Shown piece after piece: positions 42,850 to 63,857 of a stretch of 64,000 nt of DNA; the stretch's first letter is position 1, and every line of letters starts with the position of its first letter. The notes under the pieces are model-generated. The model was not told the DNA's origin. It searched no databases and saw only the letters and a list, made by a program, of their open reading frames with translations. Where the stretch lies: the sequence record MT811961.1; one strand, 5' to 3'. The position numbers and the translations under genes are program-made.

Positions 42850-42890
42850 AATGCTCCTCTGGCCATCGGGCCAGGGGGCATTTCTTTATT
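42850..42890 (+). terminator. intrinsic terminator
   Basis: AATGCTCCTCTGGCC-ATCG-GGCCAGGGGGCATT followed by T-rich tract. Confidence 0.8.
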
Positions 42891-42944
42891 TATGCTTTTG
42901 GCAAATTTATTAGACAGGCCATTTTTAAGACGAGGAACAAAACC

Positions 42945-44591: not shown

Positions 44592-44603
44592 CGGAGATTA
44601 CTA

Positions 44604-47600
44604 ATGGCTTTACCAACCATTATTCGATTGTTCCATCATCAAGGAAGTCAGGATTCCACTAACTGGATTATCTGGGCAGATCGTAACGCGCAAGACGTAC
44701 CTGCAAAGATTCCTAACTTCTTACCTGCATACAACTTCCAAAAAGGAAGCTATGTATTTCATGATGATCGAATCTATCGTTCAAAGAAACTCATCCTAGC
44801 TGGAGAATTTAATTCAGAGGCATGGGAAGAGGTTGTTTTACAAACCGGTTTTGTGGCTCGCCACGAACCAATGCGTGACTACGAAGAAGATAGCTTCGTC
44901 CTAGATGCACTTGGCAACCTACTGGGCAACAAAGCTCCAGTATCGGCTGGTGTGTTTAATCCAGATCAATGGGAAGCTGTTACAAGTGGCCGCCATATCG
45001 ATACCGCTACGGTCTATCTGGACGTATTAGGCGAAGAGCGCTACGAGACTATTGAAGAAGGTGTGTTCGTTCTTCTGGGTGGCGTACCGGAGGCATTTGA
45101 CCCATTTGAAAACATGGGTGAAGTAGACGCCTACTTTGAGAAAGGTTATACTGGTTATCGTTTCCAATTCAACCGTGACTTGGTTTGCTTTGTAGATAAT
45201 GAAGGCAGTGTTCCTTGTAACCCTGGTGACCGCGTAGGTCTTGTTAAGTCAGTTGTTGGTGATGCAGTCTTGCGTCAATACGATGCTGATTTAAAACCTG
45301 TTTATCTAGAAGATGCAACAGGCAGTGGGTACATCAGCTTCTCTGGTGACCAACACCTAATTCTAAAGACTCCGGAAAACAAAGCCGCGGTCCACGAGTT
45401 CCTTGGTGTCCCTGGTACAGGTGCCTTCGCATATCTGGACCAAGACAAAGACATTACCGAACATCGCATTGGTCCTCGTTTCCCAAGTGAAAACAAAACT
45501 TGGAATCTAAGCGAAGTATTGTTCTTGACCGAAGACGTTGTCGATTCTGAGCTTGATGGTATCTTTGATGAGATCAACGAGCTGGCAATCAACAGCTATC
45601 CGTCTGATGCGATTACGTCATTGGCGTATATGTTCTTGAATGATACCGAGTTCAATCAAGATCTTTCTCATTGGCAGTTATTCGGTAAAACAAATCTTTC
45701 TTCTATGTTCTCTGGAGCAACGGTATTTAACAAGCCGATACAACCATGGGACATGCAAACCGTTACACATACAACAAGTATGTTCGACGGCGCAAGTGCA
45801 TTTAACCAACCACTGAACAACTGGGACTTTGCTAACCTTAAAGTAGCGAAGGCCATGTTCCGCAATGCATTGGTATTTAACCAACATCTCTTTAACTGGG
45901 AAATGTTCGGTGTTTCTGATGTATCGCAAATGTTCCAAGGCGCAATTGCCTTTAATGGTTCGTTAGCTGGATGGGACCTGGGTCTTACAGGCGACGTAAG
46001 TTACATGTTCGATGGCGCAAGTGCGTTCAACCAACCAGTAGCTAATTTCCGTTTATCTCGTGCAACAAAACTCACTGCAATGTTCCGTAATGCGGTTGAG
46101 TTCGACCAACCGCTAACAGGCTGGCGTACTCATGACGTAACGGATATGAGTTACTTTGTTGCTGGTGCGATTAAGTTTAACCAAGACTTGGATCATTTTG
46201 AAACAAGCAATGTAACTAGCCTAGCAGGTGCTTTTGATGGAGCTGCTGCTTTCAACTGCAACGTTTCAACATGGGACGTAAGCAAGGTTACAAACTTCAA
46301 TGCAACCTTCCGCAATGCGGTTGTATTTGCACAAGACATTTCACTGTGGCAAACAGACTCAGCCACAAACATGGTAGAAATGTTCTCTGGCGCTGCGGCG
46401 TTCTCGTATGACATCTCTGCTTGGTGTGTGCGTTTGATTGTTGATGAGCCAAATGGCTTTGATGCAGACACAAAGACAGGCTGGCAAGATGTAGATGCGT
46501 TACAACCGCAATGGGCGATGCCATGTCTTAAGTACTTTGCACACTCGTTCTACAATGCTAACTTGATTGGTACATTGTTCCAAGATACAGAAGGTAAAGT
46601 ACCGGTAACCACACCAGGTGATAAAGTTCGTCTGATGTTGGACCTGACCACAAAAGGCAATCATGCTACGGCTGCATTAGCAACCGCACCTACGTATCGT
46701 CAAGACATCAATGGTAATGGCTATTTAGAATTCAACAACGATGAGTTCATGTCATTCCAAGATGGTGGTGATAACTATCATACATGGGAAACAATTCCAG
46801 GTATTGGTGTTTTACATGTAACTGATACAGATACAACAATCGGTCCTCGTGTAGCGGGCGATCAAAAACGTTATGTCGGTCAGTTTGTGGCACTTGCAGA
46901 TACCTATACTCCAGAAATGAAGTTGGTAGCAAGTGAGTACGTGGGTGAGGCATTTGCGCTTTATGACCAAGGTACAGTAACTAGTCTAGATTACTATCTT
47001 GAAGGTTTGAATACTTTCAATGAAGATATCTCTGGCTGGCAAATGGACTCGGTTAAAAGCATTGTTGGTCTATTTAAAGACACACTTGCGTTCAACCAAG
47101 ATATCTCCAGTTGGGTAATGTCATCTCTTGAACGAATGGACTTTGCATTCGCTGGAGCTAAAGCATTCAACCAAGACATTGGTGGATGGGATACGTCTAA
47201 CGTAACAAGCATGGAAGGCGTGTTCGAAGGAGCATCTGCGTTTAACTATGATCTTCCTTGGGATACTGCAAAAGTTACTACCTTTGCACGTGCTTTCAAA
47301 GATGCAAAAGCTTTCAATAGCCAAGTGCCATTTGACTTGACTTCGGCAATTACTATCGACGAGATGTTCGCTGGTGCGACTGTCTTTAACCGTCCGTTGG
47401 TTGGCCCAGCTCCAGTCTTAGAAAGTGCCATGGCAACATTTAAAGGTGCCTCGCTATTCAATAGTGCTGTGACTGACCTGATTGGCCCTACGGTTAAAAC
47501 GATCGAATCGATCTTTGAAGATTCAAACCAGTTTAATTCTGATCTGGCTACCTGGAATACTTCAGGAGTAGAAAGCTTTAAACGTGCGTTTGCTCGTGCG

Positions 47601-50600
47601 GTTGTCTTTGATAGTGCAATCGATCATTTCGACTTGTCGTCTGCTTTGACTATTGAAGAGATGTTCTTTGGTAGTGTGGCGTTTAACCAGCCGATTGATA
47701 GTTGGACAACAACGACTGTTACTAACATGGCAGGTGTGTTTGATGGTGCAATTGCTTTCAACCAACCTATCCAGTCTTGGGATGTTCGCTTTGTAGAAAC
47801 CTTCTACCGTACATTCTCTGGTGCGGCTGCATTCAACCAACCACTAAACTTGTGGCGTACTGAATCGGCTAAGACCTTCAAGATGATGTTCCAATCGGCA
47901 CTTGTCTTTAACCAAGACTTGGCTAACTGGAATACAACAACGGTTACTGACTTCGATCGCATGTTCTTTAATGCGACAGCTTTCAATCAAGACATCTCGC
48001 CTTGGTGTGTGAAGCAAATCCCAGTAACTGGTCCGACGATGTTCTCGTTTGGTTCCCCACTAGAGCAAGACTTCTTGCCTATCTGGGGTGCACGCTGTTT
48101 AGCTGACTTGGCTGACCTTTGGTATGACGCTGGTGACATCACAAAAGTCTTTACTGACGAAGCTAAGACAACGAACCCGACTCCTGGTGATCGTGTTGCT
48201 GTATTAGAAGATATCGGTAAACTTGGTTTAGATGCAGTTCAAAGCGATGTTGCAAAACGTCCTATTTATCGTCAAGATGCAGCTGGCCTTGGTTACCTAG
48301 AATTCCCTGCCGGAACAGAGCTTCTTGTAAGTGGTGTTTCTGGTACAGGTGTTTGGGTAAACAACATTCCGTCTGTTGGTGGTTGGGGTGATTATATTAC
48401 CGTACCATCTACTACGTTCAAGATTGATTTTAATGCACAAGAGAAAGCAGGTGCGACTCGCAAGATGGGTCAGCTTATTGTTTACTTTGGTGCTCCAATT
48501 GCTACAGATATTCTCGTGCTATCAAAAGCAGCTGGTCGTTGGGCAAAACTATACGCCCCTGGTGCAGTAAGTGACATTAGCTGTGCGTTAGAAGACCGTA
48601 CTGAGTTTGACTGGGATATCGACAGCTGGAATATGTCGCGTGTTACTCGTGCTGACTATCTCTTTGCCGGTTGTGAAATTTACAATCGCCCAATGGATTC
48701 TTGGGATACCAGTGCATTAGTTTCTGCTGTGGGTATGTTTAAAGATGCGGTTGATTTCGATCAAGCTCTACCTTGGGACCTAATGTCACTTGTAGATGCT
48801 TCGTACATGTTCCATAACGCAACTGTCTTTAATGGCGATATCGTATCATGGAATACACCAGCCCTTCAGAAAATGGAAGGTATGTTCTACAATGCACGTC
48901 AGTTTAACCAGCCTATTGGTAACTGGGACGTAAGCAAAGTAACAATCTTTAAAGAAGCATTCCGCAGTGCAGTCCGCTTTAACCAGCCTTTATTGGGATG
49001 GAATACCGACAGTGCTGTTGACATGTCTCGTTTGTTCCAAAACACAGAAGTATTCAACCAGCCTCTTACAAGTTGGGTGACTGCATCCGTAGAGAACTTC
49101 GAAGGCATGTTCATGTCTACGCCTGTGTTTAACCAGCCGTTGAATCATTTCGATACTTCGTCTGCAACAAACATGCATTTCATGTTCCGAGATGCAGAAG
49201 ACTTTGCACAAGATCTAGATACTTGGAATGTAGAAAGTGTATCTGACTTCCGTGGTATGTTCTACGGTGCAGACTCGTTTAACCACAATATCGCTACTTG
49301 GCAGTTTAACGCAACTGACATCCTAATGGATGAAATGTTCCGTGAAGCATCTATCTTTAACTACGACATCTCTCTATGGGATACTGTCAATGTTACAAGC
49401 ATGATGCGCATGTTCAACAACGCTTACTTGTTCAACCATAACTTGATCACGTGGTGTGTTAAGAACGTAACTCCAGATGAGGCCGTAGACTTTGGTGAAA
49501 GTAGTCAACTTGATACTACCGAAGTTCCTTTGTTTGGCCAGCCTTGTGTGGGTGAGCTTTTAGATGGTTACTATGACCCTTCTATCAAACAGCTATTAGG
49601 CATTAACGTAGATGGTTCTGGTGTACCTGCTCCTGGCGAACGTGTTGCATTTATTGGTGATATTTCTGGTAAGGGTAACAACGGTGTTCAGGCCGATGTG
49701 ACAAAACGTCCGGTTTACCAAGAAGATACAAATGGTCGTGGCTATCTTGTATTTACTGATGATGAACATTTTGTTGTGCCGACTATTACTGACAGTTCTC
49801 GTAACTGGGTAGCAATAGCGGGTCGTGGTGTTCCTCAATGGGAAGGTCAACCAAATGGACCAGCTAAGCTAGGTATCAAGTCTGCTGGTGGTTCAGAAAA
49901 AGTATGGATCTGGGCAGGTGAAGCAGTAGCAACCGACACAGCACTAACCGCTGTTGAATTGGGCTCTATTCGCGATGCAATGAAATTACGTGCTGATGCA
50001 TATACAACCGAACTACAAAGCAGTATCTCTTACTTGCTGGCAAATGAAGAGTATGTGACTGGCGGTATGACTGACTTCCGTCTAAACTCTATTGCTTCTT
50101 TGCGTGGTTTGTTTAAAGGTGCGGTTCGTTTCAATGAAGACATCTCTGGTTGGGATACAACCATTGTCGGTGATCTAACAGAAACGTTCATGGGTGCGGC
50201 AGCATTTAACCAAGATCTGTCTGGTTGGACGACTGATCAAGTTCAGTTCCTAGACGATGCTTTCCATGGCGCGAGTTCATTTACGTCTGATCTATCCGGC
50301 TGGGTAACATCAAAAGTACGTAGCTTTAACCGTGCGTTCAAAGACTGTAGTAACTTTGAGTCTGACTTGTCGGGATGGACGATTCGTACAGATGTACCAG
50401 TTTCATTGATGGGTACATTTACAAGTGCAGCTAAGTTTGTTTCTGACCTAAGCAGCTGGGATACAAGCAGCGTAGTTTCTATGGCTGACTTGTTCTATGG
50501 TGCACTACTATTCAATAGTGACTTGTCATCTTGGGATGTACGCAAAGTAACGAACATGACAAACATGTTCCGCTCTGCTCCATTGTTTAACTCTGATCTT

Positions 50601-56600: not shown

Positions 56601-59600
56601 TTTAGAGAAGCTTCGGCGTTTAACGGTGACATTAGTAACTGGTCAATGCCTCTTGTTAACTTTGTAGATAACATGTTCTATGCAGCAACAGCATTTAACT
56701 CGGATGTGTCTAATCTAAATCCAGTTAAAGCTACAACGTTCTCTCAGATGTTTACGGGAGCTATCGCATTTAACAATGGTTCAACAGCTGGCGACAGTGA
56801 TAATCCATTAACATGGACGATTCCAGAAGCTACTGATATGAACCGCATGTTCCGTGCAGCTCGCTCATTCAACCAAGACATCTCTACGTTTGAAACTGGC
56901 AAAGTCACTGACATGGAATTCATGTTTAATGGCGCAATTGTCTTTAACAGAGATATTGGTAATTGGGACGTAAGCAAAGTAACACTCTTTGAGTCTATGT
57001 TTGAAGAGGCAATTGCATTCACGAACAATGGACAGCCAATGAACTGGGATATTTCGTCCGCAGTTGAAATGGAAGAAATGTTCAAGGATGCAGAATCGTT
57101 TAACGCGCCAATGCCTAACTGGGCGTTCCCGGCTGGAGCAAACCTTAAAGAAATGTTAGAAAATGCGAAGGTGTTTAACCAAGATGTAAATACTTGGACC
57201 TTTGCGGCTGGTGTTACTGCGGATGACTTCATGGAAGACTGTACGTTGTTTAACAACGGTTCAGCTCCAGGAGCAAGCGATAATCCATTAACTTGGGATA
57301 CGTCGCTATTAGAAGACATGTCAGGCTTACTGCGTGGTTGTGCTTCATTTAACCAACCAGTGCCTAACCTAAGCTTTGCAGGTGTGGAAGCAGTGTCGTC
57401 GTTGTTCCGTGGATGTGCGTTGTTTAACCAGCCACTTGATCATCTAGACACAAGTATGATCACTAACTTTGCATACATGTTTACAGATGCCGAAGTCTTT
57501 AACCAAGATATCTCCATGTGGGATACTTCTAAAGCAGACAGCATGGGCAGTATGTTTAGTGGGGCTCTTGCGTTTAACCAGCCATTAGCAAACTGGGATG
57601 TTTCTAACGTTGTAGATATGTATGAAATGTTCTCTGGCGCTGAAGCGTTTAACCAGCCTCTTGGTTGTTGGGATGTTTCTAGTGTTGATGAATATGGCAT
57701 GGAATACATGTTCCAAGGTGCAACTCTATTCGATCAAAATCTTTCTGGCTGGTGTGTAAGTAACATCGCAGTACTAGAAGAAGGATTCGATGAAGGCGCA
57801 GCGTTTGAAGGTAACGCGAGCAAACACCCACAATGGGGTTCTTGTCCAACCAACGGCCTAACAGCAGATGGTGCAGTTGCAACAGCAGCGTTTGATGACA
57901 AGACACTACTATGGCAAGATGCAGCGAAGACAGTTCCAGTTACCAGTGATGGTGATACAGTCCTAGCTATTGATAGTCGCCATATAACCTCAAACACAGT
58001 CAGTGCCACAATTACTGTAAATGGTACTGCAACATACCGTGAAGATGCGGTAACAGGTACGGGCTACCTAGAACTGGATGCAGGTGCAGAACTTGTGTTC
58101 CCTGGTGTTACTTCGACTAACATCAAGTACATCTACGAAATCCCTACTCTGGGACAAGTAGAAGTAGGTTCGGCTGGTGATATTACAGAAAACATCTTCT
58201 GGGGTAAATCACAATCAGTTAAAATCGCTCGTATCGTCGCTACACTGTCAACAGGTGGTTTAAGTCCTGTTGGTCTAGGATGTGGCAAGTACGAAGATGT
58301 AGGCACAATTACGTTAGCTGAACATTTCGATGATTGGCTAATCAACAATACAAACGTGTCAAACTGGACGACTGGTTCAGTAACAAGCATGAGTGGGTTG
58401 TTCCGTAATGATACTTTGGTCGTTCCTGATATCTCCGGATGGGATGTGAGCAAAGTAACGGACTTCTCATTCATGTTTGAGAATGTTAGTGCAATGAATG
58501 CGGATATCTCCGGCTGGAATACTGAAGAAGGTACAAACTTCGAAGGTATGTTTAAAGGAGCAACAACCTTTAACGTCGATATCGGTTCATGGAACACGAG
58601 CAAGGCAACAAACCTAACTTCTATGTTTGAAGATGCAGCAGCATTTAACTACGACATCTCTGGTTGGACAATGACAGGTTCTGTTTTGACTACCAACAAG
58701 ATGTTTAAGGGTGCAGCCGCATTTAATCGTGACATGACTAACTTCAACGTTACGAATGTTACAGACATGTCAGAAATGTTTGCTAATACATCGGCATTCA
58801 ATGGTGCGTTGACTGGATGGGATCCACAGGCAGTGACAACAACGGAAGGTATGTTCGAAAATACCTCTGTGTTTAACCAGCCTATCGCGTGGACCAATAC
58901 AACTGCTTTGACTAATACATCTCGTATGTTTAAGTCAGCACTGGCATACAACAACACAGTAAACATCAATACTGCGCTTGTAACAAACGCAAGTGAAATG
59001 TTTGCAGGTACATGGGCGTTCGATACTGCTCTTGGTGCTCTTGTTACATTCCCTGCGGCCAAAGACCTAAGCAACATGTTTAATGGTGCAGCCGTCTTTA
59101 ACAAACCAGTAGCTGGTCTATTGCCTAATGTAGGTGAAGACTTTACCGGCATGTTCCGCAATGCAGAGGCATTTAACCAACCATTAACTGGCTGGACAAT
59201 GACTGAAGCACTTAAAGCCGGACACATGTTCTCTGGAGCAGCAGCGTTTAACCAACCTGTTAACTTCTGGGATATGGGTAAAGTTACAGACATCAGCTTT
59301 ATCTTTGCTAATGCAGCTGCGTTTGATCAAGTAATTGATACTTGGGATCTTGCAAGTGTAACTAGCATGCCTGGTGTGTTTAATGGTGCAGCGGCGTACA
59401 ATCAATCGCTCGCTAACATGACGATTCCAACAGCAGTTACAGATCTAAGTGACTTCTTTAACGGTGCAACATCGTTTAACCAAGAAGTAAACCACTGGAC
59501 GGTTACTCAAGTACTGACTATGCAACGCATGTTCAGTAATGCAGCAGCGTTTAATAAGTCTGTGGCTAACTGGGATCCATCTGTTTGTGAAAACATGGAA

Positions 59601-62600
59601 GAGATGTTCCGTGGTGCGACTGTCTTTAATCAGTCAATGCCATGTTGGAATGTTTCGGCTGTTACTGAAATGACAGCAATGTTCCGTGATGCAGTAGCGT
59701 TTGATCAAGACATTGGTTCTTGGTGTGTTGGTAACAACATCGCAAACAAACCATTGAACTTTGCAGCAAACTCACCAATCGACAATACAGCAAAAGAACC
59801 TAAATGGGGCGTTGCTTGTACTGCGGGCGGTGGCCTTGGTGCAGATAACATGTTGGCATTGTTTGACCCACGTGACATGAGTACGCTATTCCAGGATGCG
59901 GCACGTACAATTCCTGTAATGGCAGCTGGTGATGTAGTACGTGGTATTACCGACTTGTCTGGTAATGACAACCACGCTGAGTTTACTGGTAACAATGCAC
60001 GCTACGGCGAGGATAGCAATGGTACAGGCTGTCTATTCATTGGTCTAAGTAACCCATTGCGTGTACCAACAATCACAGATGCGGCAGACACTGCGTTCAT
60101 CTTGCCTAACATCGGCGATACGTTTATTCCTCATCTGGCGAATGCTGGCGGTCTTCAGTTCTACAACCGTGCATTTGGTAATGGTCAGGAATTCGGACCT
60201 ATTGTGGTCACTGCAAGTGGTTCGGGCAATACCATCTCCGGTAAGCAATGTATTGCATACGACGGTACGAAAGCAACGAGTACATCTTACCTCTTCTACA
60301 ATGAAGAACAGTTCAACGGCGATCTCTCTGATTGGGATATGTCCGGTGTAACTGAAATCAAGAACATGTTCCAACGCGCACGCAATTGGAACAACGGCAA
60401 AGCTCCTGGCGAAGCCTCTGTACTTGATTGGGATGTTTCTGGTGTAACCAACATGGTTAGTGTCTTCCATGATGCTAATGCAATGAACGTCGATATCGGC
60501 AACTGGGATGTAAGCAACGTAACAACGTTTAGTAACATGCTTCGCGGAACCACCGTGTTTAACAACGGCGACAATGCGAACATGAACTGGACAATTAAAG
60601 ATGGTGCTAACTTAGAGTTCTTGTTCTATGATGCAGCTGCCTTCAACCGCGATATTTCTGGTTGGAACATTGCTGGTAATGCACGCCTAGCGTCTATGTT
60701 GGAAGGTGCGATCAAATTTAACAACGGCGAGGCAGCGGGCCTATCTGGTGTACCTCTAACATCATGGGATCTGTCTCAAGTTACTACTATTGCAAAACTG
60801 TTCTATGAAGCAGAGTCCTTCAACCAAGACGTAAGTAATTGGGATGTAGGTAATGTTGTCGACATGAACGGTGTGTTTGGTTACTGTAAAGTCTTTAACC
60901 AAGATGTTTCAGGTTGGGATACGAAGAACGCAACAAACATGTCTTCGGCGTTCCGTACATGTTGGGCCTTTAACCAAGACCTAAGTGGATGGGACACAAG
61001 TAAGAACACGAACTTCAGCTTTATGTTCTTGCAAGCTAAGGTGTTTAACAACGGCTCGACTGTTGGTAATGACAAACCATTGAGCTTTGATACCTCTGCG
61101 GGTACAAACTTCTTGAGTATGTTTAACAACGCGAACGCCTTTAACCAAGACATCAGTTCGTTTGACTTATCGAATGCAACAGCAACGGCATTTATGTTCA
61201 GTCACTGTCATGTGTTCAACCAAAACATCAACGGCATCGGACAAATCGGCGGCGATAACATCAATACGATGTTTGGCTACTGTCGTGAGTTTGACAATGT
61301 CGGCGTACCAATGGAACTTAACTTACCGACTGCTACAAACGTTAAACGTATGTTTGCAGAATGTTATAAGTTAAACCAACCAATCAAGATGACGGCTCCT
61401 GTATTAGATAGCTATGAAGATATGCTATATCGTTGTAGCATCTACGATGCGGACGTTAGCGAACTGCTTGTACCATCGGCAACGAAACTAACGGGTCTAT
61501 TCTGGATTGCTATGGCATTCACTGGTAAGGGCCTAGATAACTGGGATGTTTCTAACATCACTGACTTTACACGTATCTTCCGTAACACAAGTATCAACAA
61601 GGCATTGAATTGTTGGGACTTCAGTAGTGCTACCAACATGTCCAACATGTTCGGCGGTGCGAACAGTATGGATGCGGATATCTCTGGTTGGTGTGTACCA
61701 AACATCACAACTGAACCAACCGCGTTTGCGACTGGTGCACCTATTGCTACTCAACCTGCGAAATTGCCTGATTGGGCTAACATGGCAGGCTGTACTAAAG
61801 CACCTACAACAACCATCGATACTACAGGCATGCTAGCGGCATTCGACATGCAAGACACATCACGCATGTGGCAGGATGAAGCTAAGACCGTTCCGGTTAC
61901 AGCAGCAGGTCAAACTGTTCGCGTGATCGAGGACATGTCTGGCAATGGTAACGATGCTGTTCTTGGAAATGGCGCTAAGTACCAAGAAGACGCTAACGGT
62001 GTTGGTGCATTGGAAATGGCGACAGCTGTAAGCTTTAAAGTGGCTGGTGTAACTACTGCTTGTGAGGTTATCGTAGAATACCCAACAATCGGTAAAGCAC
62101 ACTTTGCTCGCTTAGCTAATGCTGGCGGTCAAGAGCTATGGAACAAGTTTATCAACAACTTGTACAAACCTAAGTGGGGTGCAGTTGTAATCAGACCTGA
62201 TGGTTCTGGTGATGACTCTATTCCTGCTGGTGCTTGTGCGGCTCGTGCTGACTATACTGACATGACGTTCTCTACTTCGGCTGAATACGCATTGTCTGGT
62301 GAAGACTACATTCTGAGTGACATGACAGATTGGACTACTGCTCATCTGAAATCGATCGCAGGTATCTTCCGTGACACCGCAAACTTCAACCAAGACATCT
62401 CTACGTGGGATCTGTCAGCAGTAGAAAATGCGGACCGTGTGTTTACTGATGCGAAAGCATTTAACCAAGACCTAGAAGGATGGGTTGGTTTCAAACCTAC
62501 TCGTGCTGCTGGTATCTTTGAACGTGCAACCGCATTTAACGGCGCGATTGACGGATGGGACATGTCACGTTGTACGAACTTCTACAACATGTTTAGCGGT

Positions 62601-63857
62601 GCTACAAGCTTCAATAAACCTGTAGGTAGTTGGAGTACTGTGGAAGGTGGATACATGCAAGGTGTATTCCGTGGTGCAACCATGTTTAACCAGCCACTAA
62701 CAAACTGGACGTTCCCTAAAGCGTTCGATGTGAGCTTCTTCTTTGCTAATGCAACTGCATTTAACCAAGACGTGAACAACCTTGACTTCTCTACAGTTGG
62801 CACGGTTCGTTCAATGTTCAATGGTGCGACTGCCTTTAACAACGGCTCAGTAGCTGGTGCAAGTGATAATCCATTAACGATTAACTTCGCTAACTCTGCT
62901 GACCAAACACAGGTATTCCAAAGTGCAACTGCGTTCAACCAGCCATTACCTAACATCACGTTCGGTAAAGCAGGTACAGACATCACGTCAATGTTCCTTG
63001 GTGCTTCAGTCTTTAACCAAAGCTTGAGTCACTGGGATACTACAAACGTAGATGACATGGCAAGTGTCTTCAAAGAAGCAACACTATTTAACAACGGTTC
63101 TGCTCCGGGTGTAAGTGATAATCCACTGACTTGGAATACCACAGCTGTTACTAGTACGAAAGGTATGTTCTGTCATGCTGACTCGTTCAACCAAGAAGTT
63201 CCATTCGATGTTGGTAACGTAACAGACGGTAGTGAAATGTTCCGTGAAGCTGCACTGTTCAACCAGAACGTGGCATCACTTCAATTCACACAGGCAACAA
63301 CTCTGGCTCGCATCTTCGAAAATGCAGTGGCGTTTAACAACGGCTCGGCAGATGGTGTGACAGGTGCAATGCTAAACTGGGCAAGTACCAATGCCCTAGT
63401 AAACGCCGAATCTATGTTTGAAGGTGCTTCTATCTTCGACCAAGATGTTTCACTACAAACTGGCTCGATCACTAATGCTAAGGCAATGTTCAAGAACGCG
63501 CCTAAGTTTGATCGTGACATGATGTGGTTTAGCTTCGGCGAAGTATTGGACATGAGTGAGATGTTCCGTGGTGCAACAGCGTTTACTGGTAGCGGAATTG
63601 ATTTCTGGCAAACTGGTAAGGCAACAGACATGAGCTTCATGTTTGCTGATGCTGCTGCATTCAATGCGGTACCGGTTACTTGGTCATTTACTGAAGTAAC
63701 AAACATGACAGGTATGTTCTCAGGAGCAACTAGCATGAACCAAGACATCTCTGGTTGGTGTGTTCCGAAGATAACTGTAGCTCCAACAAGTTTCGACTTG
63801 AATGCGGGCTTTGCAGGTAACGCGGCACTACAACCACAATGGGGTGTTCCTTGTTAA
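44604..63857 (+). CDS. giant (6417 aa) modular DUF285/BspA-like repeat protein, probable tail fibre/adhesin
   Basis: Uninterrupted 19.25-kb ORF with GGAG RBS. Very many W(D/N)xxxVTxMxxMFxxAxxFNQxLxx repeats grouped into 11 blocks, each preceded by a (W/F)QD....PV...GD.V..I.D.SGNG...Y.ED.NG.GYLEF domain. Confidence 0.9.
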   Translation: MALPTIIRLFHHQGSQDSTNWIIWADRNAQDVPAKIPNFLPAYNFQKGSYVFHDDRIYRSKKLILAGEFNSEAWEEVVLQTGFVARHEPMRDYEEDSFVLDALGNLLGNKAPVSAGVFNPDQWEAVTSGRHIDTATVYLDVLGEERYETIEEGVFVLLGGVPEAFDPFENMGEVDAYFEKGYTGYRFQFNRDLVCFVDNEGSVPCNPGDRVGLVKSVVGDAVLRQYDADLKPVYLEDATGSGYISFSGDQHLILKTPENKAAVHEFLGVPGTGAFAYLDQDKDITEHRIGPRFPSENKTWNLSEVLFLTEDVVDSELDGIFDEINELAINSYPSDAITSLAYMFLNDTEFNQDLSHWQLFGKTNLSSMFSGATVFNKPIQPWDMQTVTHTTSMFDGASAFNQPLNNWDFANLKVAKAMFRNALVFNQHLFNWEMFGVSDVSQMFQGAIAFNGSLAGWDLGLTGDVSYMFDGASAFNQPVANFRLSRATKLTAMFRNAVEFDQPLTGWRTHDVTDMSYFVAGAIKFNQDLDHFETSNVTSLAGAFDGAAAFNCNVSTWDVSKVTNFNATFRNAVVFAQDISLWQTDSATNMVEMFSGAAAFSYDISAWCVRLIVDEPNGFDADTKTGWQDVDALQPQWAMPCLKYFAHSFYNANLIGTLFQDTEGKVPVTTPGDKVRLMLDLTTKGNHATAALATAPTYRQDINGNGYLEFNNDEFMSFQDGGDNYHTWETIPGIGVLHVTDTDTTIGPRVAGDQKRYVGQFVALADTYTPEMKLVASEYVGEAFALYDQGTVTSLDYYLEGLNTFNEDISGWQMDSVKSIVGLFKDTLAFNQDISSWVMSSLERMDFAFAGAKAFNQDIGGWDTSNVTSMEGVFEGASAFNYDLPWDTAKVTTFARAFKDAKAFNSQVPFDLTSAITIDEMFAGATVFNRPLVGPAPVLESAMATFKGASLFNSAVTDLIGPTVKTIESIFEDSNQFNSDLATWNTSGVESFKRAFARAVVFDSAIDHFDLSSALTIEEMFFGSVAFNQPIDSWTTTTVTNMAGVFDGAIAFNQPIQSWDVRFVETFYRTFSGAAAFNQPLNLWRTESAKTFKMMFQSALVFNQDLANWNTTTVTDFDRMFFNATAFNQDISPWCVKQIPVTGPTMFSFGSPLEQDFLPIWGARCLADLADLWYDAGDITKVFTDEAKTTNPTPGDRVAVLEDIGKLGLDAVQSDVAKRPIYRQDAAGLGYLEFPAGTELLVSGVSGTGVWVNNIPSVGGWGDYITVPSTTFKIDFNAQEKAGATRKMGQLIVYFGAPIATDILVLSKAAGRWAKLYAPGAVSDISCALEDRTEFDWDIDSWNMSRVTRADYLFAGCEIYNRPMDSWDTSALVSAVGMFKDAVDFDQALPWDLMSLVDASYMFHNATVFNGDIVSWNTPALQKMEGMFYNARQFNQPIGNWDVSKVTIFKEAFRSAVRFNQPLLGWNTDSAVDMSRLFQNTEVFNQPLTSWVTASVENFEGMFMSTPVFNQPLNHFDTSSATNMHFMFRDAEDFAQDLDTWNVESVSDFRGMFYGADSFNHNIATWQFNATDILMDEMFREASIFNYDISLWDTVNVTSMMRMFNNAYLFNHNLITWCVKNVTPDEAVDFGESSQLDTTEVPLFGQPCVGELLDGYYDPSIKQLLGINVDGSGVPAPGERVAFIGDISGKGNNGVQADVTKRPVYQEDTNGRGYLVFTDDEHFVVPTITDSSRNWVAIAGRGVPQWEGQPNGPAKLGIKSAGGSEKVWIWAGEAVATDTALTAVELGSIRDAMKLRADAYTTELQSSISYLLANEEYVTGGMTDFRLNSIASLRGLFKGAVRFNEDISGWDTTIVGDLTETFMGAAAFNQDLSGWTTDQVQFLDDAFHGASSFTSDLSGWVTSKVRSFNRAFKDCSNFESDLSGWTIRTDVPVSLMGTFTSAAKFVSDLSSWDTSSVVSMADLFYGALLFNSDLSSWDVRKVTNMTNMFRSAPLFNSDLGDWRVSAVLTMDYMFDGATAFDQDISRWCVQQIASKPIDFDKGAAFAGDGAKQPYWGGFCLTERSEFFHSGSDKDCMWQDTARTIPVTNPGDPVAFVMDLTGNQRHLQQSDNAKRPIYREDDNGVGYLEFGPNHDMIVDYNGRADHIIGVVGRGKMTTANIDFYGGKGIKRYFTPNAIGVHKLTDMAGIAPTLDAASKTSANNTMSQRAKVYAANAQTTMNDFFAGNLNFNNVDVQTWDMREVTSIQSMFSGCASMNLDLSTWNTAKLTNATYAFKDAGAFNKSIDAWNVQALTNTMGMFQGATAYDQPMSSWTTSALATTKWMFKDAVAFNQALSWDMSKVTDVSYMFEGAENFNQNISGWNVATVTTAEGMFKDASRFNNASSSMANMDWSACTNFTHMFQAALNFNAIVDNWTFYSGASAITMAGMFMDARAFNKNVNTWNTTRVTDMNSMFRGAYAFNNGLQALTEASGNFTVANATTLQRMFQDARAFNQNISDWSTGNVTDMSFMFFSNSSVSVFNQPIGSWNVGNVLTMESMFHGTSAFNQNLANWNMSKVTNVTNMFRNATAYDNGGVNELEKWDTSSFTAMRGMFEFATAFNKMLCRWDVSNVTDMTNVFNGADAMTAYLAGWDVQHIPSEPNLFGAVNVANPPQWGLAPDPCRSDCSRGLADAGSIATYLGFEKQWFYQDTAGTTPVTASGQKVMLLEDSSGNGNDITWADAASAPTYREDANGNGYLEFEEGQSIQYAGMSDGALIVFNLVNNGIVSITRDTATGEIFGNDRDDAFLVSAIAIAPSTADETALRTAMGTCGPTYADRNTTFQNLFAGEEHIGSVAGLSTTGVTNFEGTFLNAINFNEDINAWDMSSALTTKGMFSGATAFNQNVSSWVVSSIVTMEDMFRGAGAFNNGGTAGTNSVPLTWTTTALTDITGVFRDASAFNQDISLWNVSGVQSFAFAFAGATSFNQNVSGWTTAAATNMQATFQGATSFNQPLAGWDLTGVVTIQSILEGATSFDQPVNWDVSTVANFGKAFKGASAFNQDLSGWDTASAVDLREMFMSAIVFNSDLSTWDVSDVTFFQGMFCDAISFNGNISTWDTGSAVNMSYMFDGANVFNGDLSNWKTGLVTTMSNMFHNTSDFNKPIGRWDVSKVVDFDHMFSDALAFNQRISCWNTESATNMDDMFNNATSFSQNLIGWCVDKITTKPTDFDTGTGASFLNSTTLQPQWGTCTPGSIGGDNILASFSPTLKETLWQDSGKTVPVANVGDNIAVIEDTSGNGNDLIVTGGCKYMEDSNGLGYIRLEFAPPLPGQPMLPPPTLSIPTVTTSCDIAFVIPSVGDTIVERTNGTDIFGPAFRPMNFGPIVITASGSGSTVRGFDCTEYGPGLTTMLADYFANDTAFNQNLDHWDTSDVEYFYSLFRGATAFNNGGTSGATTSPLMWDMSSAIELDEMFRDATSFNQPVGSWDVSNVTSMESLFEGATSFNQSVNAWTVTVLENAASMFQDATSYNQAMDSWTTPALSDINYMFSGATAFNHPLDNWDVSNVTEMRNVFEGATAFNGTVNGWNTTNCTELVDVFKEASAFNRPLDNWDVSNVTTMEQLFTDAIAFNQPLNTWDVSNVKNFISTFEGALDFNQDLSSWTPVAAEVTEYMFYRASSFNNGGVGTMYWDVSNVFSAGGMFNAASAFNANLSGWKTTRLGNAVEMFKDAVAYNQPMGCWDVSSVTAMEEMFMGATLFDQSLQGWNVENIGSKPSDFDTDSGIENDANKLPIWGTSGTGGLTASSPLSFTRIADIEGLWQDFAKTTAATADGDPVAVAEDFSGNSNEVWFQNTTLRIDGNGNGYLEMTNGGNLRADSVRVAADLSFNVPGVGHTFVPMLASGSGVTYWNQPATMMITDIVITESGFGNTVTGHNCKTWIPGTTTSLDYLFAGQENFNGDLSHWDTTGVTSAQYMFFNAKAFNQPLNHFDMSAVENVTGMFNGAEVFNQDLNSWDVSKVTSASSMFREASAFNGDISNWSMPLVNFVDNMFYAATAFNSDVSNLNPVKATTFSQMFTGAIAFNNGSTAGDSDNPLTWTIPEATDMNRMFRAARSFNQDISTFETGKVTDMEFMFNGAIVFNRDIGNWDVSKVTLFESMFEEAIAFTNNGQPMNWDISSAVEMEEMFKDAESFNAPMPNWAFPAGANLKEMLENAKVFNQDVNTWTFAAGVTADDFMEDCTLFNNGSAPGASDNPLTWDTSLLEDMSGLLRGCASFNQPVPNLSFAGVEAVSSLFRGCALFNQPLDHLDTSMITNFAYMFTDAEVFNQDISMWDTSKADSMGSMFSGALAFNQPLANWDVSNVVDMYEMFSGAEAFNQPLGCWDVSSVDEYGMEYMFQGATLFDQNLSGWCVSNIAVLEEGFDEGAAFEGNASKHPQWGSCPTNGLTADGAVATAAFDDKTLLWQDAAKTVPVTSDGDTVLAIDSRHITSNTVSATITVNGTATYREDAVTGTGYLELDAGAELVFPGVTSTNIKYIYEIPTLGQVEVGSAGDITENIFWGKSQSVKIARIVATLSTGGLSPVGLGCGKYEDVGTITLAEHFDDWLINNTNVSNWTTGSVTSMSGLFRNDTLVVPDISGWDVSKVTDFSFMFENVSAMNADISGWNTEEGTNFEGMFKGATTFNVDIGSWNTSKATNLTSMFEDAAAFNYDISGWTMTGSVLTTNKMFKGAAAFNRDMTNFNVTNVTDMSEMFANTSAFNGALTGWDPQAVTTTEGMFENTSVFNQPIAWTNTTALTNTSRMFKSALAYNNTVNINTALVTNASEMFAGTWAFDTALGALVTFPAAKDLSNMFNGAAVFNKPVAGLLPNVGEDFTGMFRNAEAFNQPLTGWTMTEALKAGHMFSGAAAFNQPVNFWDMGKVTDISFIFANAAAFDQVIDTWDLASVTSMPGVFNGAAAYNQSLANMTIPTAVTDLSDFFNGATSFNQEVNHWTVTQVLTMQRMFSNAAAFNKSVANWDPSVCENMEEMFRGATVFNQSMPCWNVSAVTEMTAMFRDAVAFDQDIGSWCVGNNIANKPLNFAANSPIDNTAKEPKWGVACTAGGGLGADNMLALFDPRDMSTLFQDAARTIPVMAAGDVVRGITDLSGNDNHAEFTGNNARYGEDSNGTGCLFIGLSNPLRVPTITDAADTAFILPNIGDTFIPHLANAGGLQFYNRAFGNGQEFGPIVVTASGSGNTISGKQCIAYDGTKATSTSYLFYNEEQFNGDLSDWDMSGVTEIKNMFQRARNWNNGKAPGEASVLDWDVSGVTNMVSVFHDANAMNVDIGNWDVSNVTTFSNMLRGTTVFNNGDNANMNWTIKDGANLEFLFYDAAAFNRDISGWNIAGNARLASMLEGAIKFNNGEAAGLSGVPLTSWDLSQVTTIAKLFYEAESFNQDVSNWDVGNVVDMNGVFGYCKVFNQDVSGWDTKNATNMSSAFRTCWAFNQDLSGWDTSKNTNFSFMFLQAKVFNNGSTVGNDKPLSFDTSAGTNFLSMFNNANAFNQDISSFDLSNATATAFMFSHCHVFNQNINGIGQIGGDNINTMFGYCREFDNVGVPMELNLPTATNVKRMFAECYKLNQPIKMTAPVLDSYEDMLYRCSIYDADVSELLVPSATKLTGLFWIAMAFTGKGLDNWDVSNITDFTRIFRNTSINKALNCWDFSSATNMSNMFGGANSMDADISGWCVPNITTEPTAFATGAPIATQPAKLPDWANMAGCTKAPTTTIDTTGMLAAFDMQDTSRMWQDEAKTVPVTAAGQTVRVIEDMSGNGNDAVLGNGAKYQEDANGVGALEMATAVSFKVAGVTTACEVIVEYPTIGKAHFARLANAGGQELWNKFINNLYKPKWGAVVIRPDGSGDDSIPAGACAARADYTDMTFSTSAEYALSGEDYILSDMTDWTTAHLKSIAGIFRDTANFNQDISTWDLSAVENADRVFTDAKAFNQDLEGWVGFKPTRAAGIFERATAFNGAIDGWDMSRCTNFYNMFSGATSFNKPVGSWSTVEGGYMQGVFRGATMFNQPLTNWTFPKAFDVSFFFANATAFNQDVNNLDFSTVGTVRSMFNGATAFNNGSVAGASDNPLTINFANSADQTQVFQSATAFNQPLPNITFGKAGTDITSMFLGASVFNQSLSHWDTTNVDDMASVFKEATLFNNGSAPGVSDNPLTWNTTAVTSTKGMFCHADSFNQEVPFDVGNVTDGSEMFREAALFNQNVASLQFTQATTLARIFENAVAFNNGSADGVTGAMLNWASTNALVNAESMFEGASIFDQDVSLQTGSITNAKAMFKNAPKFDRDMMWFSFGEVLDMSEMFRGATAFTGSGIDFWQTGKATDMSFMFADAAAFNAVPVTWSFTEVTNMTGMFSGATSMNQDISGWCVPKITVAPTSFDLNAGFAGNAALQPQWGVPC

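What the first reader, a model, noticed from the sequence alone, without database searches (positions are those of the whole stretch)
44604..63857. 6417-aa ORF made of 11 tandem [spacer domain + DUF285/BspA solenoid + cap] modules
Seen: 11 spacer domains starting near 45150, 46530, 48100, 49550, 50780, 52620, 54310, 55940, 57870, 59845 and 61825. Each is followed by a repeat block ending in a W(C/D/N)V...P..F.....P.(W/F)G cap (11 caps counted; the first ends WAMPC). There is no signal peptide, the N-terminus resembles that of the upstream tail-like protein, and it follows a terminator and a TATG element. This is an exceptionally large phage protein that uses a repeat family mostly known from bacterial surface proteins. 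Inference: a very long multivalent tail fibre or adhesin in which each module may read a different surface glycan or protein, and whose module number may vary between isolates.
Basis: partly seen in the sequence, partly recalled or inferred. Interest (0 to 1): 0.75.

Follow-up and report, generated by a model that had tools for sequence, protein, structure and literature searches.

The report
Giant 11-module phage tail-fibre-like protein
A Vibrio jumbo phage encodes one intact 700-kDa protein made of a tail-fibre-type attachment domain followed by eleven bead-like repeat modules, most likely a very long host-binding fibre whose outer modules are exchanged between related phages.

Summary
Window 44604-63857 (+) is one intact 6417-aa ORF of Vibrio phage vB_pir03 (ORF200, called a "PARCEL" protein in 2020). 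It has 11 modules, each a ~155-aa beta-sandwich spacer, 7-18 DUF285/PARCEL 25-residue coils and a Cys-stapled cap, about 149 coils in all.

New here:
- The first 172 aa are homologous to the baseplate-inserting N-terminus of the Agrobacterium phage Milano tailspike gp124 and the 7-7-1 tail fibre.
- The same anchor heads the upstream gene ORF199 and shorter 1-3-module paralogues.
- Orthologues exist in C-ZP2022 (11 modules), sm033 (13 modules, 7406 aa, unannotated) and a metagenomic phage (11 modules).
- Modules 1-6 are collinear in all four. Modules 7-9 are replaced between pir03 and C-ZP2022 (36-43% against an ~89% background).
- Conserved modules have dN/dS of 0.04-0.10.
- Paralogous modules are only 28-36% identical and there are no DNA tandem repeats, so an assembly artefact is unlikely.

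Not supported:
- The terminator and TATG lie before ORF199, not before this ORF.
- The spacers do not match LamG models themselves.

Best reading is a baseplate-anchored, multivalent fibre (confidence ~0.6). Presence in virions is untested.

The parts
42855..42892 (+). Terminator-like hairpin, T-run and AT-rich stretch containing TATG, between the helicase gene and ORF199. This is the likely boundary and start region of an ORF199-ORF200 transcription unit.
   Evidence: Pattern scan and sequence. Function is inferred. TATG alone is not informative.
42945..44591 (+). ORF199 (QNI21146.1, 548 aa), the partner gene. It carries the same anchor domain, split into an N-terminal piece and a C-terminal piece around an insert of about 400 aa with weak EPTP/EAR-like hits.
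   Evidence: Homologues occur only in pir03, C-ZP2022 and sm033, always directly upstream of the giant gene.
44593..44596 (+). GGAG Shine-Dalgarno-like motif 7 nt before the ATG. The gap to the ORF199 stop codon is 12 nt.
   Evidence: Sequence.
44604..63857 (+). Giant ORF (ORF200, QNI21147.1): 6417 aa, 700 kDa, pI 4.3, 59 Cys.
44604..45119 (+). N-terminal anchor domain (aa 1-172). It is all-beta and built of tandem small CBM5/12-like subdomains.
   Evidence: AF2 pLDDT 68-92 over aa 1-160. Foldseek hits 8fqc (Milano baseplate and receptor-binding complex) and 9rkv (7-7-1 tail fibres) at E 3e-6. Profile against PDB sequences: E 1.4e-8 and 1.3e-7. The domain is shared by 10 or more relatives.
45120..46520 (+). 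Module 1: spacer 45120-45620, 11 PARCEL units, cap from 46422.
46521..48092 (+). Module 2: spacer 46521-46985, 13 units, cap from 48003. This module was modelled.
   Evidence: AF2 model pLDDT 94, pTM 0.87.
48093..49541 (+). Module 3: spacer 48093-48575, 11 units, cap from 49452.
49542..50774 (+). Module 4: spacer 49542-50024, 7 units, cap from 50682.
50775..52580 (+). Module 5: spacer 50775-51257, 15 units, cap from 52494.
52581..54278 (+). Module 6: spacer 52581-53066, 14 units, cap from 54183. It is the last module collinear in all four giants.
54279..55907 (+). Module 7: spacer 54279-54761, 14 units, cap from 55821 (this cap has no Cys pair). First module of the stretch that differs from C-ZP2022.
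55908..57839 (+). Module 8: spacer 55908-56363, 16 units, cap from 57750. It is 50% identical to sm033 module 8 but has no orthologue in C-ZP2022.
57840..59813 (+). Module 9: spacer 57840-58316, 18 units, cap from 59721.
59814..61787 (+). Module 10: spacer 59814-60287, 12 units, cap from 61689. It is 95% identical to C-ZP2022 module 10, with low dS (0.27).
61788..63857 (+). Module 11: spacer 61788-62279, 18 units, cap 63756-63854, then the stop codon. The protein ends exactly on the cap's last Cys.

Best explanation
ORF200 is a virion fibre, that is, a giant receptor-binding or adhesin protein of the tail.

Attachment: its first ~170 residues form the same kind of small-beta-domain anchor that inserts the Milano tailspike gp124 into the baseplate wedge. 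They probably fix the protein to the pir03 baseplate or to an adaptor. The adaptor may be the co-transcribed ORF199, which carries the same domain split around a propeller-like insert.

Body: 11 rigid modules follow like beads on a string. Each module is a small beta-sandwich plus a helix that caps the start of a PARCEL/DUF285 solenoid of 7-18 coils. A C-terminal cap, stapled by a conserved Cys pair, closes each solenoid.

Binding: the solenoid surfaces built from the hypervariable coil positions are the likely ligand-binding faces. The proximal modules (1-6) are a conserved shaft or a conserved binder. The distal modules are exchanged as cassettes between related phages and would tune which Vibrio surfaces are bound.

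Shown: the ORF, the module grammar, the homologies, the conservation pattern and purifying selection.
Inferred: virion location, baseplate attachment, oligomeric state, ligand binding and any role in host range.
For: - The intact 6417-aa ORF has 149 units, 11 spacers and 11 caps.
- The module model is confident: pLDDT 94, pTM 0.87. It shows a beta-sandwich, a helix and a solenoid.
- The anchor profile hits 9rkv_M 'Putative tail fiber' (E 1.4e-8) and 8fqc_P1 'Tail Spike protein, gp124' (E 1.3e-7) at their residues ~30-119. Hits to T4-type long-tail-fibre proximal subunits are weak.
- Foldseek on the N-terminal model gives the same entries at E 3e-6.
- In Milano, TSP residues 55-60 and 100-115 are wedged between baseplate wedge proteins BW2 and BW3 (PMC10811340).
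- One anchor heads many different distal parts, as receptor-binding proteins do:
  - ORF199;
  - pir03 QNI21234.1 (1227 aa);
  - sm033 proteins of 838, 535 and 1165 aa;
  - metagenomic 1-3-module proteins;
  - a GH18-like protein of phage Yong XC31.
- The proximal part is conserved and the distal part is variable:
  - modules 1-5 are 87-94% identical between pir03 and C-ZP2022;
  - modules 1-5 are 48-57% identical to sm033, with identical lengths and order;
  - modules 7-9 are only 36-43% identical, against a neighbourhood median of 89%.
- dN/dS is 0.04-0.10 in the conserved parts.
- Distant relatives of the spacer match phrog_10356 'virion structural protein'.
- There is no signal peptide.
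- A paired Cys is present in 9 of 11 caps, and both Cys are absent together in one.
- Two DUF285 proteins were found in particles of the giant virus AaV (PMC7507832).
- In phage OBP the PARCEL gene lies next to a putative baseplate gene.
- pir03 adsorbs fast and lyses 31 of 51 Vibrio strains of several species (PMC7765460).
Against: - No virion proteomics or micrograph shows such a fibre in pir03. The 2020 paper describes only a head, a neck and a contractile tail.
- The gene lies between a helicase gene and a terminase-like gene, not in a tail module. The authors do note that the genome has no modular order.
- The fold match to the Milano and 7-7-1 N-termini is local, with TM-score 0.13-0.28 and large rmsd. 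The same small fold is a chitin-binding module in chitinases and deacetylases.
- PARCEL solenoids are not known to trimerise as fibres do.
- The DUF285 PHROG families are all of unknown function.
Confidence: 0.6

Rival explanations
1. It is a virion-borne adhesin for non-host substrates. The N-terminal tandem CBM5/12-like domains would be true chitin or glycan binders rather than an anchor, or the PARCEL modules would stick virions to chitin, mucus or biofilm matrix where vibrios live. Attachment to the particle could be elsewhere, for example on the head, neck or sheath.
For: - After the phage fibres, Foldseek hits to the N-terminal model are the chitin-binding domains of Vibrio chitin oligosaccharide deacetylases and Serratia chitinase B (E 7e-3 to 0.2, about 2 A rmsd over 44 residues).
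- The profile weakly hits a chitinase chain and the deacetylases (E 0.07-0.2).
- The same N-terminal domain precedes a GH18-like domain in phage Yong XC31. That order is the usual chitinase architecture.
- The gene lies about 22 kb downstream of the head gene cluster and next to a terminase-like gene.
Against: - The phage tailspike and fibre N-termini score 5-7 orders of magnitude better than any chitin-binding domain.
- In Milano this region contacts baseplate proteins.
- Replacement of distal modules between phages isolated on different Vibrio species fits host recognition better than binding of a common substrate.
Confidence: 0.15
2. It is a non-virion protein made during infection, for example an intracellular scaffold, a decoy, or a protein released at lysis. 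Its PARCEL modules would bind host or phage macromolecules inside the cell.
For: - The neighbours are DNA-metabolism genes: exonuclease, helicase, UV endonuclease and DHFR.
- All phage DUF285 PHROGs have unknown function.
- No proteomic evidence places the protein in virions.
Against: - The N-terminus is homologous to tailspike and tail-fibre anchors.
- The anchor is shared by several proteins with different distal domains.
- Conserved Cys pairs in the caps suit an extracellular protein.
- The spacer family links to 'virion structural protein' PHROG 10356.
- The proximal-conserved, distal-variable pattern is that of fibres.
Confidence: 0.15
3. The ORF is an assembly artefact (collapsed or expanded repeats), or it is really several genes.
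For: - The sequence is highly repetitive at the protein level.
- C-ZP2022 annotates the orthologue as two CDSs, and sm033 does not annotate it at all.
Against: - There are no DNA tandem repeats at TRF score 50 or above. Dispersed DNA copies are only 60-80% identical over 30-110 nt.
- Paralogous modules are 28-36% identical.
- Four independent assemblies give collinear giants.
- The sm033 gene is open across a 127-nt assembly overlap at the record ends.
- The C-ZP2022 record also splits the neighbouring helicase into three CDSs, which suggests indel errors in that record.
- dN/dS is 0.04-0.10.
- The ORF ends exactly at a module boundary.
Confidence: 0.02

Closest known systems
Tailspike gp124 of Agrobacterium phage Milano (PDB 8FQC) and the putative tail fibre of phage 7-7-1 (PDB 9RKV)
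   Same: The N-terminal ~120 residues share tandem small beta subdomains with a recurring Y..G..V...Y....G.F....W motif. The match is significant by sequence profile (E 1e-7 to 1e-8) and by fold. In Milano this part fixes the spike to the baseplate wedge.
   Different: Those proteins are 587 aa long, with a conventional spike or fibre body. Here the anchor is followed by 6245 residues of PARCEL modules. Trimer formation and baseplate contact are not shown for pir03.
PARCEL / DUF285 repeat proteins (PF03382, TIGR02167 Liste_lipo_26), named 'BspA family leucine-rich repeat surface protein' by NCBI
   Same: Both have tandem 25-residue amphipathic repeats with conserved F, A, F and N positions and hypervariable hydrophilic positions. 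The repeats are thought to diversify surfaces (PMC2996958).
   Different: The bacterial members are mostly membrane-targeted lipoproteins or surface proteins. This one has no signal peptide or lipobox, is phage-encoded, and interleaves the repeats with 11 beta-sandwich spacers and caps. No DNA dyad symmetry was found.
PARCEL proteins of other large phages and giant viruses (OBP_145, Aeromonas phage D3, Klebsiella phage N1M2, Goslar, Lak phages, Aureococcus anophagefferens virus)
   Same: They share the same solenoid fold and sequence family (BFVD hits at E 1e-19 to 1e-17; 111 phage records). Two AaV members are packaged in virions.
   Different: All are much shorter, at most ~1700 aa where seen, and none is reported with an 11-13-fold module array. 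The pir03-type anchor was found only in the pir03, sm033 and Yong lineage and in metagenomic relatives.
LamG / concanavalin A-like jelly-roll domains (PF13385) and phrog_10356 'virion structural protein'
   Same: The spacer belongs to a large unnamed family (7102 hits). Its ~260-aa members match phrog_10356, and 3 of 75 members carry PF13385. The model is a small beta-sandwich.
   Different: The pir03 spacers are ~155 aa, about half a LamG domain after the shared N-terminal motif. They match no Pfam model at E up to 10, and no PDB fold at E 1e-3 or better.
Multi-specificity fibre systems of jumbo and other myophages, such as the branched fibres of Klebsiella phage phiKp24
   Same: Many binding units are carried on one tail, and this is linked to a broad host range (review PMC13282480).
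   Different: Those systems use many separate proteins that share adaptor domains. Here up to 11-13 units are concatenated in one polypeptide, alongside a few short paralogues.

Membership tests
PARCEL / DUF285 repeat proteins (PF03382, TIGR02167) | Tandem 25-26-residue repeats that score above the curated cut-offs. | tested here: met
   PF03382 scores 934-1273 bits per third of the protein, against a cut-off of 25. TIGR02167 scores 40.4 against 30. There are 149 units.
PARCEL / DUF285 repeat proteins (PF03382, TIGR02167) | Amphipathic unit with conserved hydrophobic positions and variable hydrophilic positions. | tested here: met
   F12 97%, A15 84%, F18 90%, N19 83%. Positions 4, 9, 10, 13 and 16 have entropy above 3 bits.
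PARCEL / DUF285 repeat proteins (PF03382, TIGR02167) | Dyad symmetry of the repeat-coding DNA (the 'palindromic' in PARCEL). | tested here: inconclusive
   A crude best-complementarity test on 149 units gave 0.475, against 0.472 for codon-shuffled controls. The method differs from that of PMC2996958.
PARCEL / DUF285 repeat proteins (PF03382, TIGR02167) | Membrane targeting (signal peptide or lipobox), common in bacterial members. | tested here: not met
   No hydrophobic N-terminus and no transmembrane-like window. This is not a strict requirement of the family.
Phage tail fibre or tailspike with a Milano gp124-type N-terminal anchor | N-terminal domain homologous to the baseplate-binding N-terminus. 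| tested here: met
   The profile hits 9rkv_M at E 1.4e-8 and 8fqc_P1 at E 1.3e-7. Foldseek gives E 3e-6 at probability 1.00, but the match is local with low TM-score.
Phage tail fibre or tailspike with a Milano gp124-type N-terminal anchor | Presence in the virion, attached to the baseplate. | not testable with these tools
   No proteome or map of pir03 was found.
Phage tail fibre or tailspike with a Milano gp124-type N-terminal anchor | Homotrimeric assembly. | not tested
Phage tail fibre or tailspike with a Milano gp124-type N-terminal anchor | Gene placed among tail or baseplate genes. | tested here: not met
   The gene lies between a helicase gene and a terminase-like gene. Tail genes lie at 3-15 kb and 48-51 kb of the genome. 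The genome is reported to lack modular order.
LamG / ConA-like domain (PF13385) for the spacers | Match to the PF13385 model, and a jelly roll of about 150-200 aa. | tested here: not met
   The spacers give no hit at E up to 10 and are ~155 aa long. Only 3 of 75 distant family members reach PF13385.
Canonical leucine-rich repeat proteins (the 'BspA family LRR' label) | LRR fold or LRR Pfam models. | tested here: not met
   Pfam gives only PF03382. Foldseek against the PDB places LRR proteins at E about 1 and finds no match at E 1e-3 or better.

The most novel reading that the evidence does not exclude
pir03-like Vibrio jumbo phages carry a previously unrecognised class of receptor-binding fibre. 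It is a single 0.7-0.8 MDa polypeptide in which a tailspike-type anchor carries 11-13 autonomous PARCEL solenoid modules. Each module would be a separate ligand-binding unit. The distal modules would be exchanged as cassettes between phages, so that one fibre encodes a broad, reprogrammable host range. This would also give the first function for the PARCEL/DUF285 repeat in any virus.
Probability: 0.35. Interest if true: 0.78.

Novelty: new variant of a known kind. Interest (0 to 1): 0.62.

Why it matters
PARCEL/DUF285 repeats are common in bacteria, giant viruses and large phages (111 phage records here). They have no established function and no close solved structure.

This locus ties the repeat to a recognisable tail-fibre anchor. 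It also shows a clear grammar (anchor, then beta-sandwich, solenoid and cap, 11-13 times) with a conserved proximal half and a cassette-swapped distal half. That makes a concrete hypothesis testable by virion proteomics and cryo-EM.

The finding may help explain the unusually broad host range and fast adsorption reported for pir03, a phage proposed for aquaculture therapy. It also flags annotation gaps. The 7406-aa sm033 orthologue is unannotated, and the gene is labelled 'hypothetical' in GenBank.

Tried and rejected
Searches that found nothing useful:
- Pfam and PHROG scans of the spacers and of the N-terminus.
- A single-sequence PDB search with module 2, and a PDB search with the spacer profile, which gave only chance-level hits.
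- A Foldseek PDB search with the whole-module model. Nothing reached E 1e-3, so the solenoid has no close solved relative and the spacer fold could not be named.
- A word-based search for 350-1100-aa proteins sharing the N-terminal domain.
- A word-based search for other giants, which returned only P0002.
- A PDB search with the ORF199 profile.

- No literature search found virion proteomics of phage PARCEL proteins. The OBP genome paper is not held.
- P0002 is too long for the context look-up.

Ideas rejected:
- TATG as a promoter signal. The 4-mer is too common.
- Recent tandem duplication or assembly collapse.
- LamG membership of the spacers.
- PARCEL DNA dyad symmetry, which was not detected.

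- In my private working notes I wrote rough motif patterns for CBM5/12-type and LamG-type domains from memory, as leads.
- The script printed where the two annotated C-ZP2022 CDSs align on the pir03 protein. These are annotated gene bounds, and I give no break position in this report.
Full report
**Identity of the window.** The window is Vibrio phage vB_pir03 (MT811961.1), positions 124001-188000, at 100% identity. The finding's ORF, 44604..63857 on the + strand, is intact and 6417 aa long. GenBank annotates it as the hypothetical protein QNI21147.1. The genome paper already singled it out as ORF200, "a very large gene ... 19,254 bp" with a PARCEL/DUF285 domain "not described in phages to date" (PMC7765460). 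The existence and size of the gene and its repeat family are therefore published. Its internal architecture, relatives and likely role are not.

**Checking the observation.**
- Pfam DUF285 matches 52 stretches with overwhelming scores, and NCBIfam TIGR02167 (PARCEL repeat) passes its cut-off.
- A unit HMM built from the protein itself finds 149 units of 25 residues, broken by exactly 11 stretches of about 200 residues.
- The spacers align with each other at 22-30% identity, with a conserved core.
- Unit positions F12, A15, F18 and N19 are 83-97% conserved. Positions 4, 9, 10, 13 and 16 are hypervariable.
- Nine of the 11 caps carry a Cys pair (the C of WCV and a C just after the P.WG motif). 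One cap lacks both. The pattern recurs in the relatives.
- The protein ends on the last cap Cys, so the ORF stops exactly at a module boundary.
- The protein is 700 kDa with pI 4.3, and has no signal-peptide-like or transmembrane-like segment.

**Is it an artefact?**
- Tandem Repeats Finder reports nothing. Dispersed DNA copies are only 60-80% identical over 30-110 nt.
- Paralogous modules share only 28-36% protein identity, so the array is old and easy to assemble.
- Independent assemblies give collinear giants:
  - C-ZP2022 has 11 modules. It is annotated as two CDSs in different frames, which is one frameshift. The neighbouring helicase in that record is split into three CDSs, which suggests indel errors.
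  - vB_VpaM_sm033 has 13 modules.
  - The metagenomic protein P0002 is 6272 aa long with 11 modules.
- The sm033 gene is unannotated because it runs over the ends of the linear record.
- Between pir03 and C-ZP2022, dN/dS is 0.04-0.10 for the anchor and for modules 1-5 and 10, like the neighbouring ORF199.

**Structure.**
- AlphaFold2 on cap 1 plus module 2, with the other modules and 62 family members as the alignment, gave pLDDT 94 and pTM 0.87. The model is a beta-sandwich of about eight strands, a 15-residue helix, and a regular solenoid with one bridge per 25 residues.
- Foldseek found no PDB match at E 1e-3 or better. The best were pentapeptide-repeat solenoids and, weakly, cupins. LRR proteins scored E about 1.
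- BFVD returned PARCEL proteins of Aeromonas phage D3, Klebsiella phage N1M2, Aureococcus anophagefferens virus and Megaviridae.

**The spacer family.**
- The spacer profile found 7102 proteins among 1.8 billion representatives. Most are proteins of about 260 aa without a Pfam domain.
- These relatives match phrog_10356 'virion structural protein'. Three of 75 reach PF13385 Laminin_G_3.
- The pir03 spacers themselves match no Pfam model at E up to 10.
- "LamG-like" is therefore at most a distant kinship.

**The N-terminus is the key new result.**
- Residues 1-172 form a domain shared by:
  - all four giants;
  - metagenomic proteins with one to three modules (P0004, P0008, P0009, P0016, P0017, P0037);
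  - sm033 proteins of 838 (P0050), 535 and 1165 aa;
  - a 563-aa metagenomic protein;
  - a GH18-like 586-aa protein of phage Yong XC31.
- ORF199 and the second pir03 PARCEL protein QNI21234.1 carry the domain split around an insert of about 400 aa.
- A profile of this domain hits the N-terminal ~120 residues of the phage 7-7-1 'putative tail fiber' (9RKV, E 1.4e-8) and of Milano 'Tail Spike protein gp124' (8FQC, E 1.3e-7). It hits T4-type long-tail-fibre proximal subunits and chitin-binding domains only weakly.
- The AF2 model of residues 1-345 is poor overall (pLDDT 59), but residues 1-160 score 68-92. Foldseek on it finds the same two phage entries at E 3e-6 and then CBM5/12 chitin-binding domains.
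- In Milano, exactly this part of gp124 is wedged between baseplate wedge proteins BW2 and BW3 (PMC10811340).

**Comparative pattern.**
- Modules 1-5 are 87-94% identical between pir03 and C-ZP2022, against a median of 89% for 20 neighbouring genes.
- Modules 1-5 are 48-57% identical to sm033 and 42-56% to P0002, with the same lengths and order.
- Module 6 is 66% identical to C-ZP2022. Modules 7-9 are only 36-43%, which is the paralogue level. Module 10 is 95% with low dS (0.27), and module 11 is 81%.
- pir03 module 8 is 50% identical to sm033 module 8, so C-ZP2022 is the phage that changed.
- pir03 was isolated on V. harveyi and C-ZP2022 on V. parahaemolyticus.
- A conserved proximal part with cassette-swapped distal parts is the classic signature of phage receptor-binding fibres. 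That is established knowledge about such fibres and an inference for this protein.

**Context.**
- The ATG lies 12 nt after the ORF199 stop codon, behind a GGAG.
- The only terminator-like hairpin, with its T-run and a TATG-containing AT-rich stretch, lies at 42855-42892, between the helicase gene and ORF199.
- ORF199 occurs only in the three phages that have the giant gene, always directly upstream of it. The two genes look like one unit.
- Downstream lies a terminase-like gene (ORF202 in the paper). Head genes fill the first 22 kb of the window.
- BONAISHI and the Yong phages lack the gene.

**Interpretation.**
- The best-supported reading is a baseplate-anchored, multivalent fibre (confidence about 0.6).
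- The main rival keeps the protein on the virion but makes the CBM-like N-terminus, or the modules, bind chitin or other non-host material.
- A non-virion role is less likely, and an artefact is very unlikely.
- Virion location, oligomeric state and ligands are all untested. No proteome or micrograph of such a fibre exists for pir03.

**Novelty.** This is a new variant of a known kind. It joins a tail-fibre-type anchor to an unprecedented concatenation of PARCEL modules. It is also the first indication of what PARCEL repeats may do in a phage.

- In my private working notes I wrote rough domain motif patterns from memory as leads.
- The script printed the alignment bounds of the two annotated C-ZP2022 CDSs. 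No break position is given in this report.

Noticed in passing
L003 19992-34800 and L004 1-7539 (OV032902.1, Vibrio phage vB_VpaM_sm033): The orthologue of the giant gene is unannotated because it runs over the ends of the linear record. The last 127 nt of the record equal the first 127 nt, which is an assembly overlap. Frame arithmetic gives one ORF of 7406 aa with 13 modules. GenBank annotates only the part at the start of the record, as a 2508-aa CDS.
   Followed up: yes
window 42945-44591 (ORF199): The upstream gene carries the same anchor domain as the giant protein, but split. About 50 residues sit at its N-terminus and about 80 at its C-terminus, around a ~400-aa insert with weak EPTP/EAR (beta-propeller) hits. 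It occurs only in the phages that have the giant gene, always directly upstream of it.
   Followed up: partly
MT811961.1 251408-255091 (L015 2409-6092), outside the window: pir03 has a second PARCEL gene, QNI21234.1 (1227 aa), right after the RNR beta subunit gene. It has a split anchor with a ~390-aa insert, then one spacer and 7 units. It looks like ORF199 fused to one module. sm033 has an 838-aa anchor-plus-one-module gene at the same genomic position.
   Followed up: partly
window 42855-42892: A strong terminator-like hairpin (10 pairs, 7 of them GC), a T-run and TTTATTTATG lie between the helicase stop codon and ORF199.
   Followed up: partly
L002 8191-10238 and 12001-31162 (OM319461.1, C-ZP2022): In this record the helicase is annotated as three overlapping CDSs and the giant gene as two. 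Several frameshifts close together suggest sequencing indel errors rather than real gene decay.
   Followed up: no
L009 8986-10746 (MK308674.1, phage vB_VmeM-Yong XC31, QAX96285.1): A 586-aa protein combines the same N-terminal anchor (profile E 7e-28) with a weak GH18 (chitinase-like) match just under the Pfam cut-off. sm033 also has a 557-aa GH18-like gene, about 6.7 kb upstream of its giant.
   Followed up: partly
L005 (Logan SRR13169044 contig, 71.7 kb): A metagenomic phage-like contig encodes another giant of the same kind. Its gene product is 5306 aa, probably truncated at the contig end, and the last 2976 aa hold 4 modules. A 285-aa RHS-repeat/YD-shell protein follows, then a 3-module anchor protein (P0004).
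   Followed up: partly
MT811961.1 about 211.5-223.7 kb (L014), outside the window: A row of about eight minus-strand paralogues of ~1.3 kb is flanked by two small proteins that contain pieces of the anchor motif (profile E about 3e-9). The paper reports ConA-like lectin/glucanase and carbohydrate-binding structural hits for some of these genes. This may be another receptor-binding gene cluster.
   Followed up: no
L011 / L012 8001-8807 (protein P0034): A 268-aa member of the spacer family lies in what looks like a bacterial chromosome. It sits in a three-gene unit next to GDP-mannose, glycosyltransferase and Wzy polysaccharide genes. The spacer family is therefore not confined to phages.
   Followed up: no
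L016 (JN627160.1, Pseudomonas phage OBP): The 1713-aa PARCEL protein OBP_145 lies directly next to OBP_146, 'putative phage baseplate assembly protein'. PARCEL genes were found in 111 phage records, nearly all with genomes above 150 kb.
   Followed up: no
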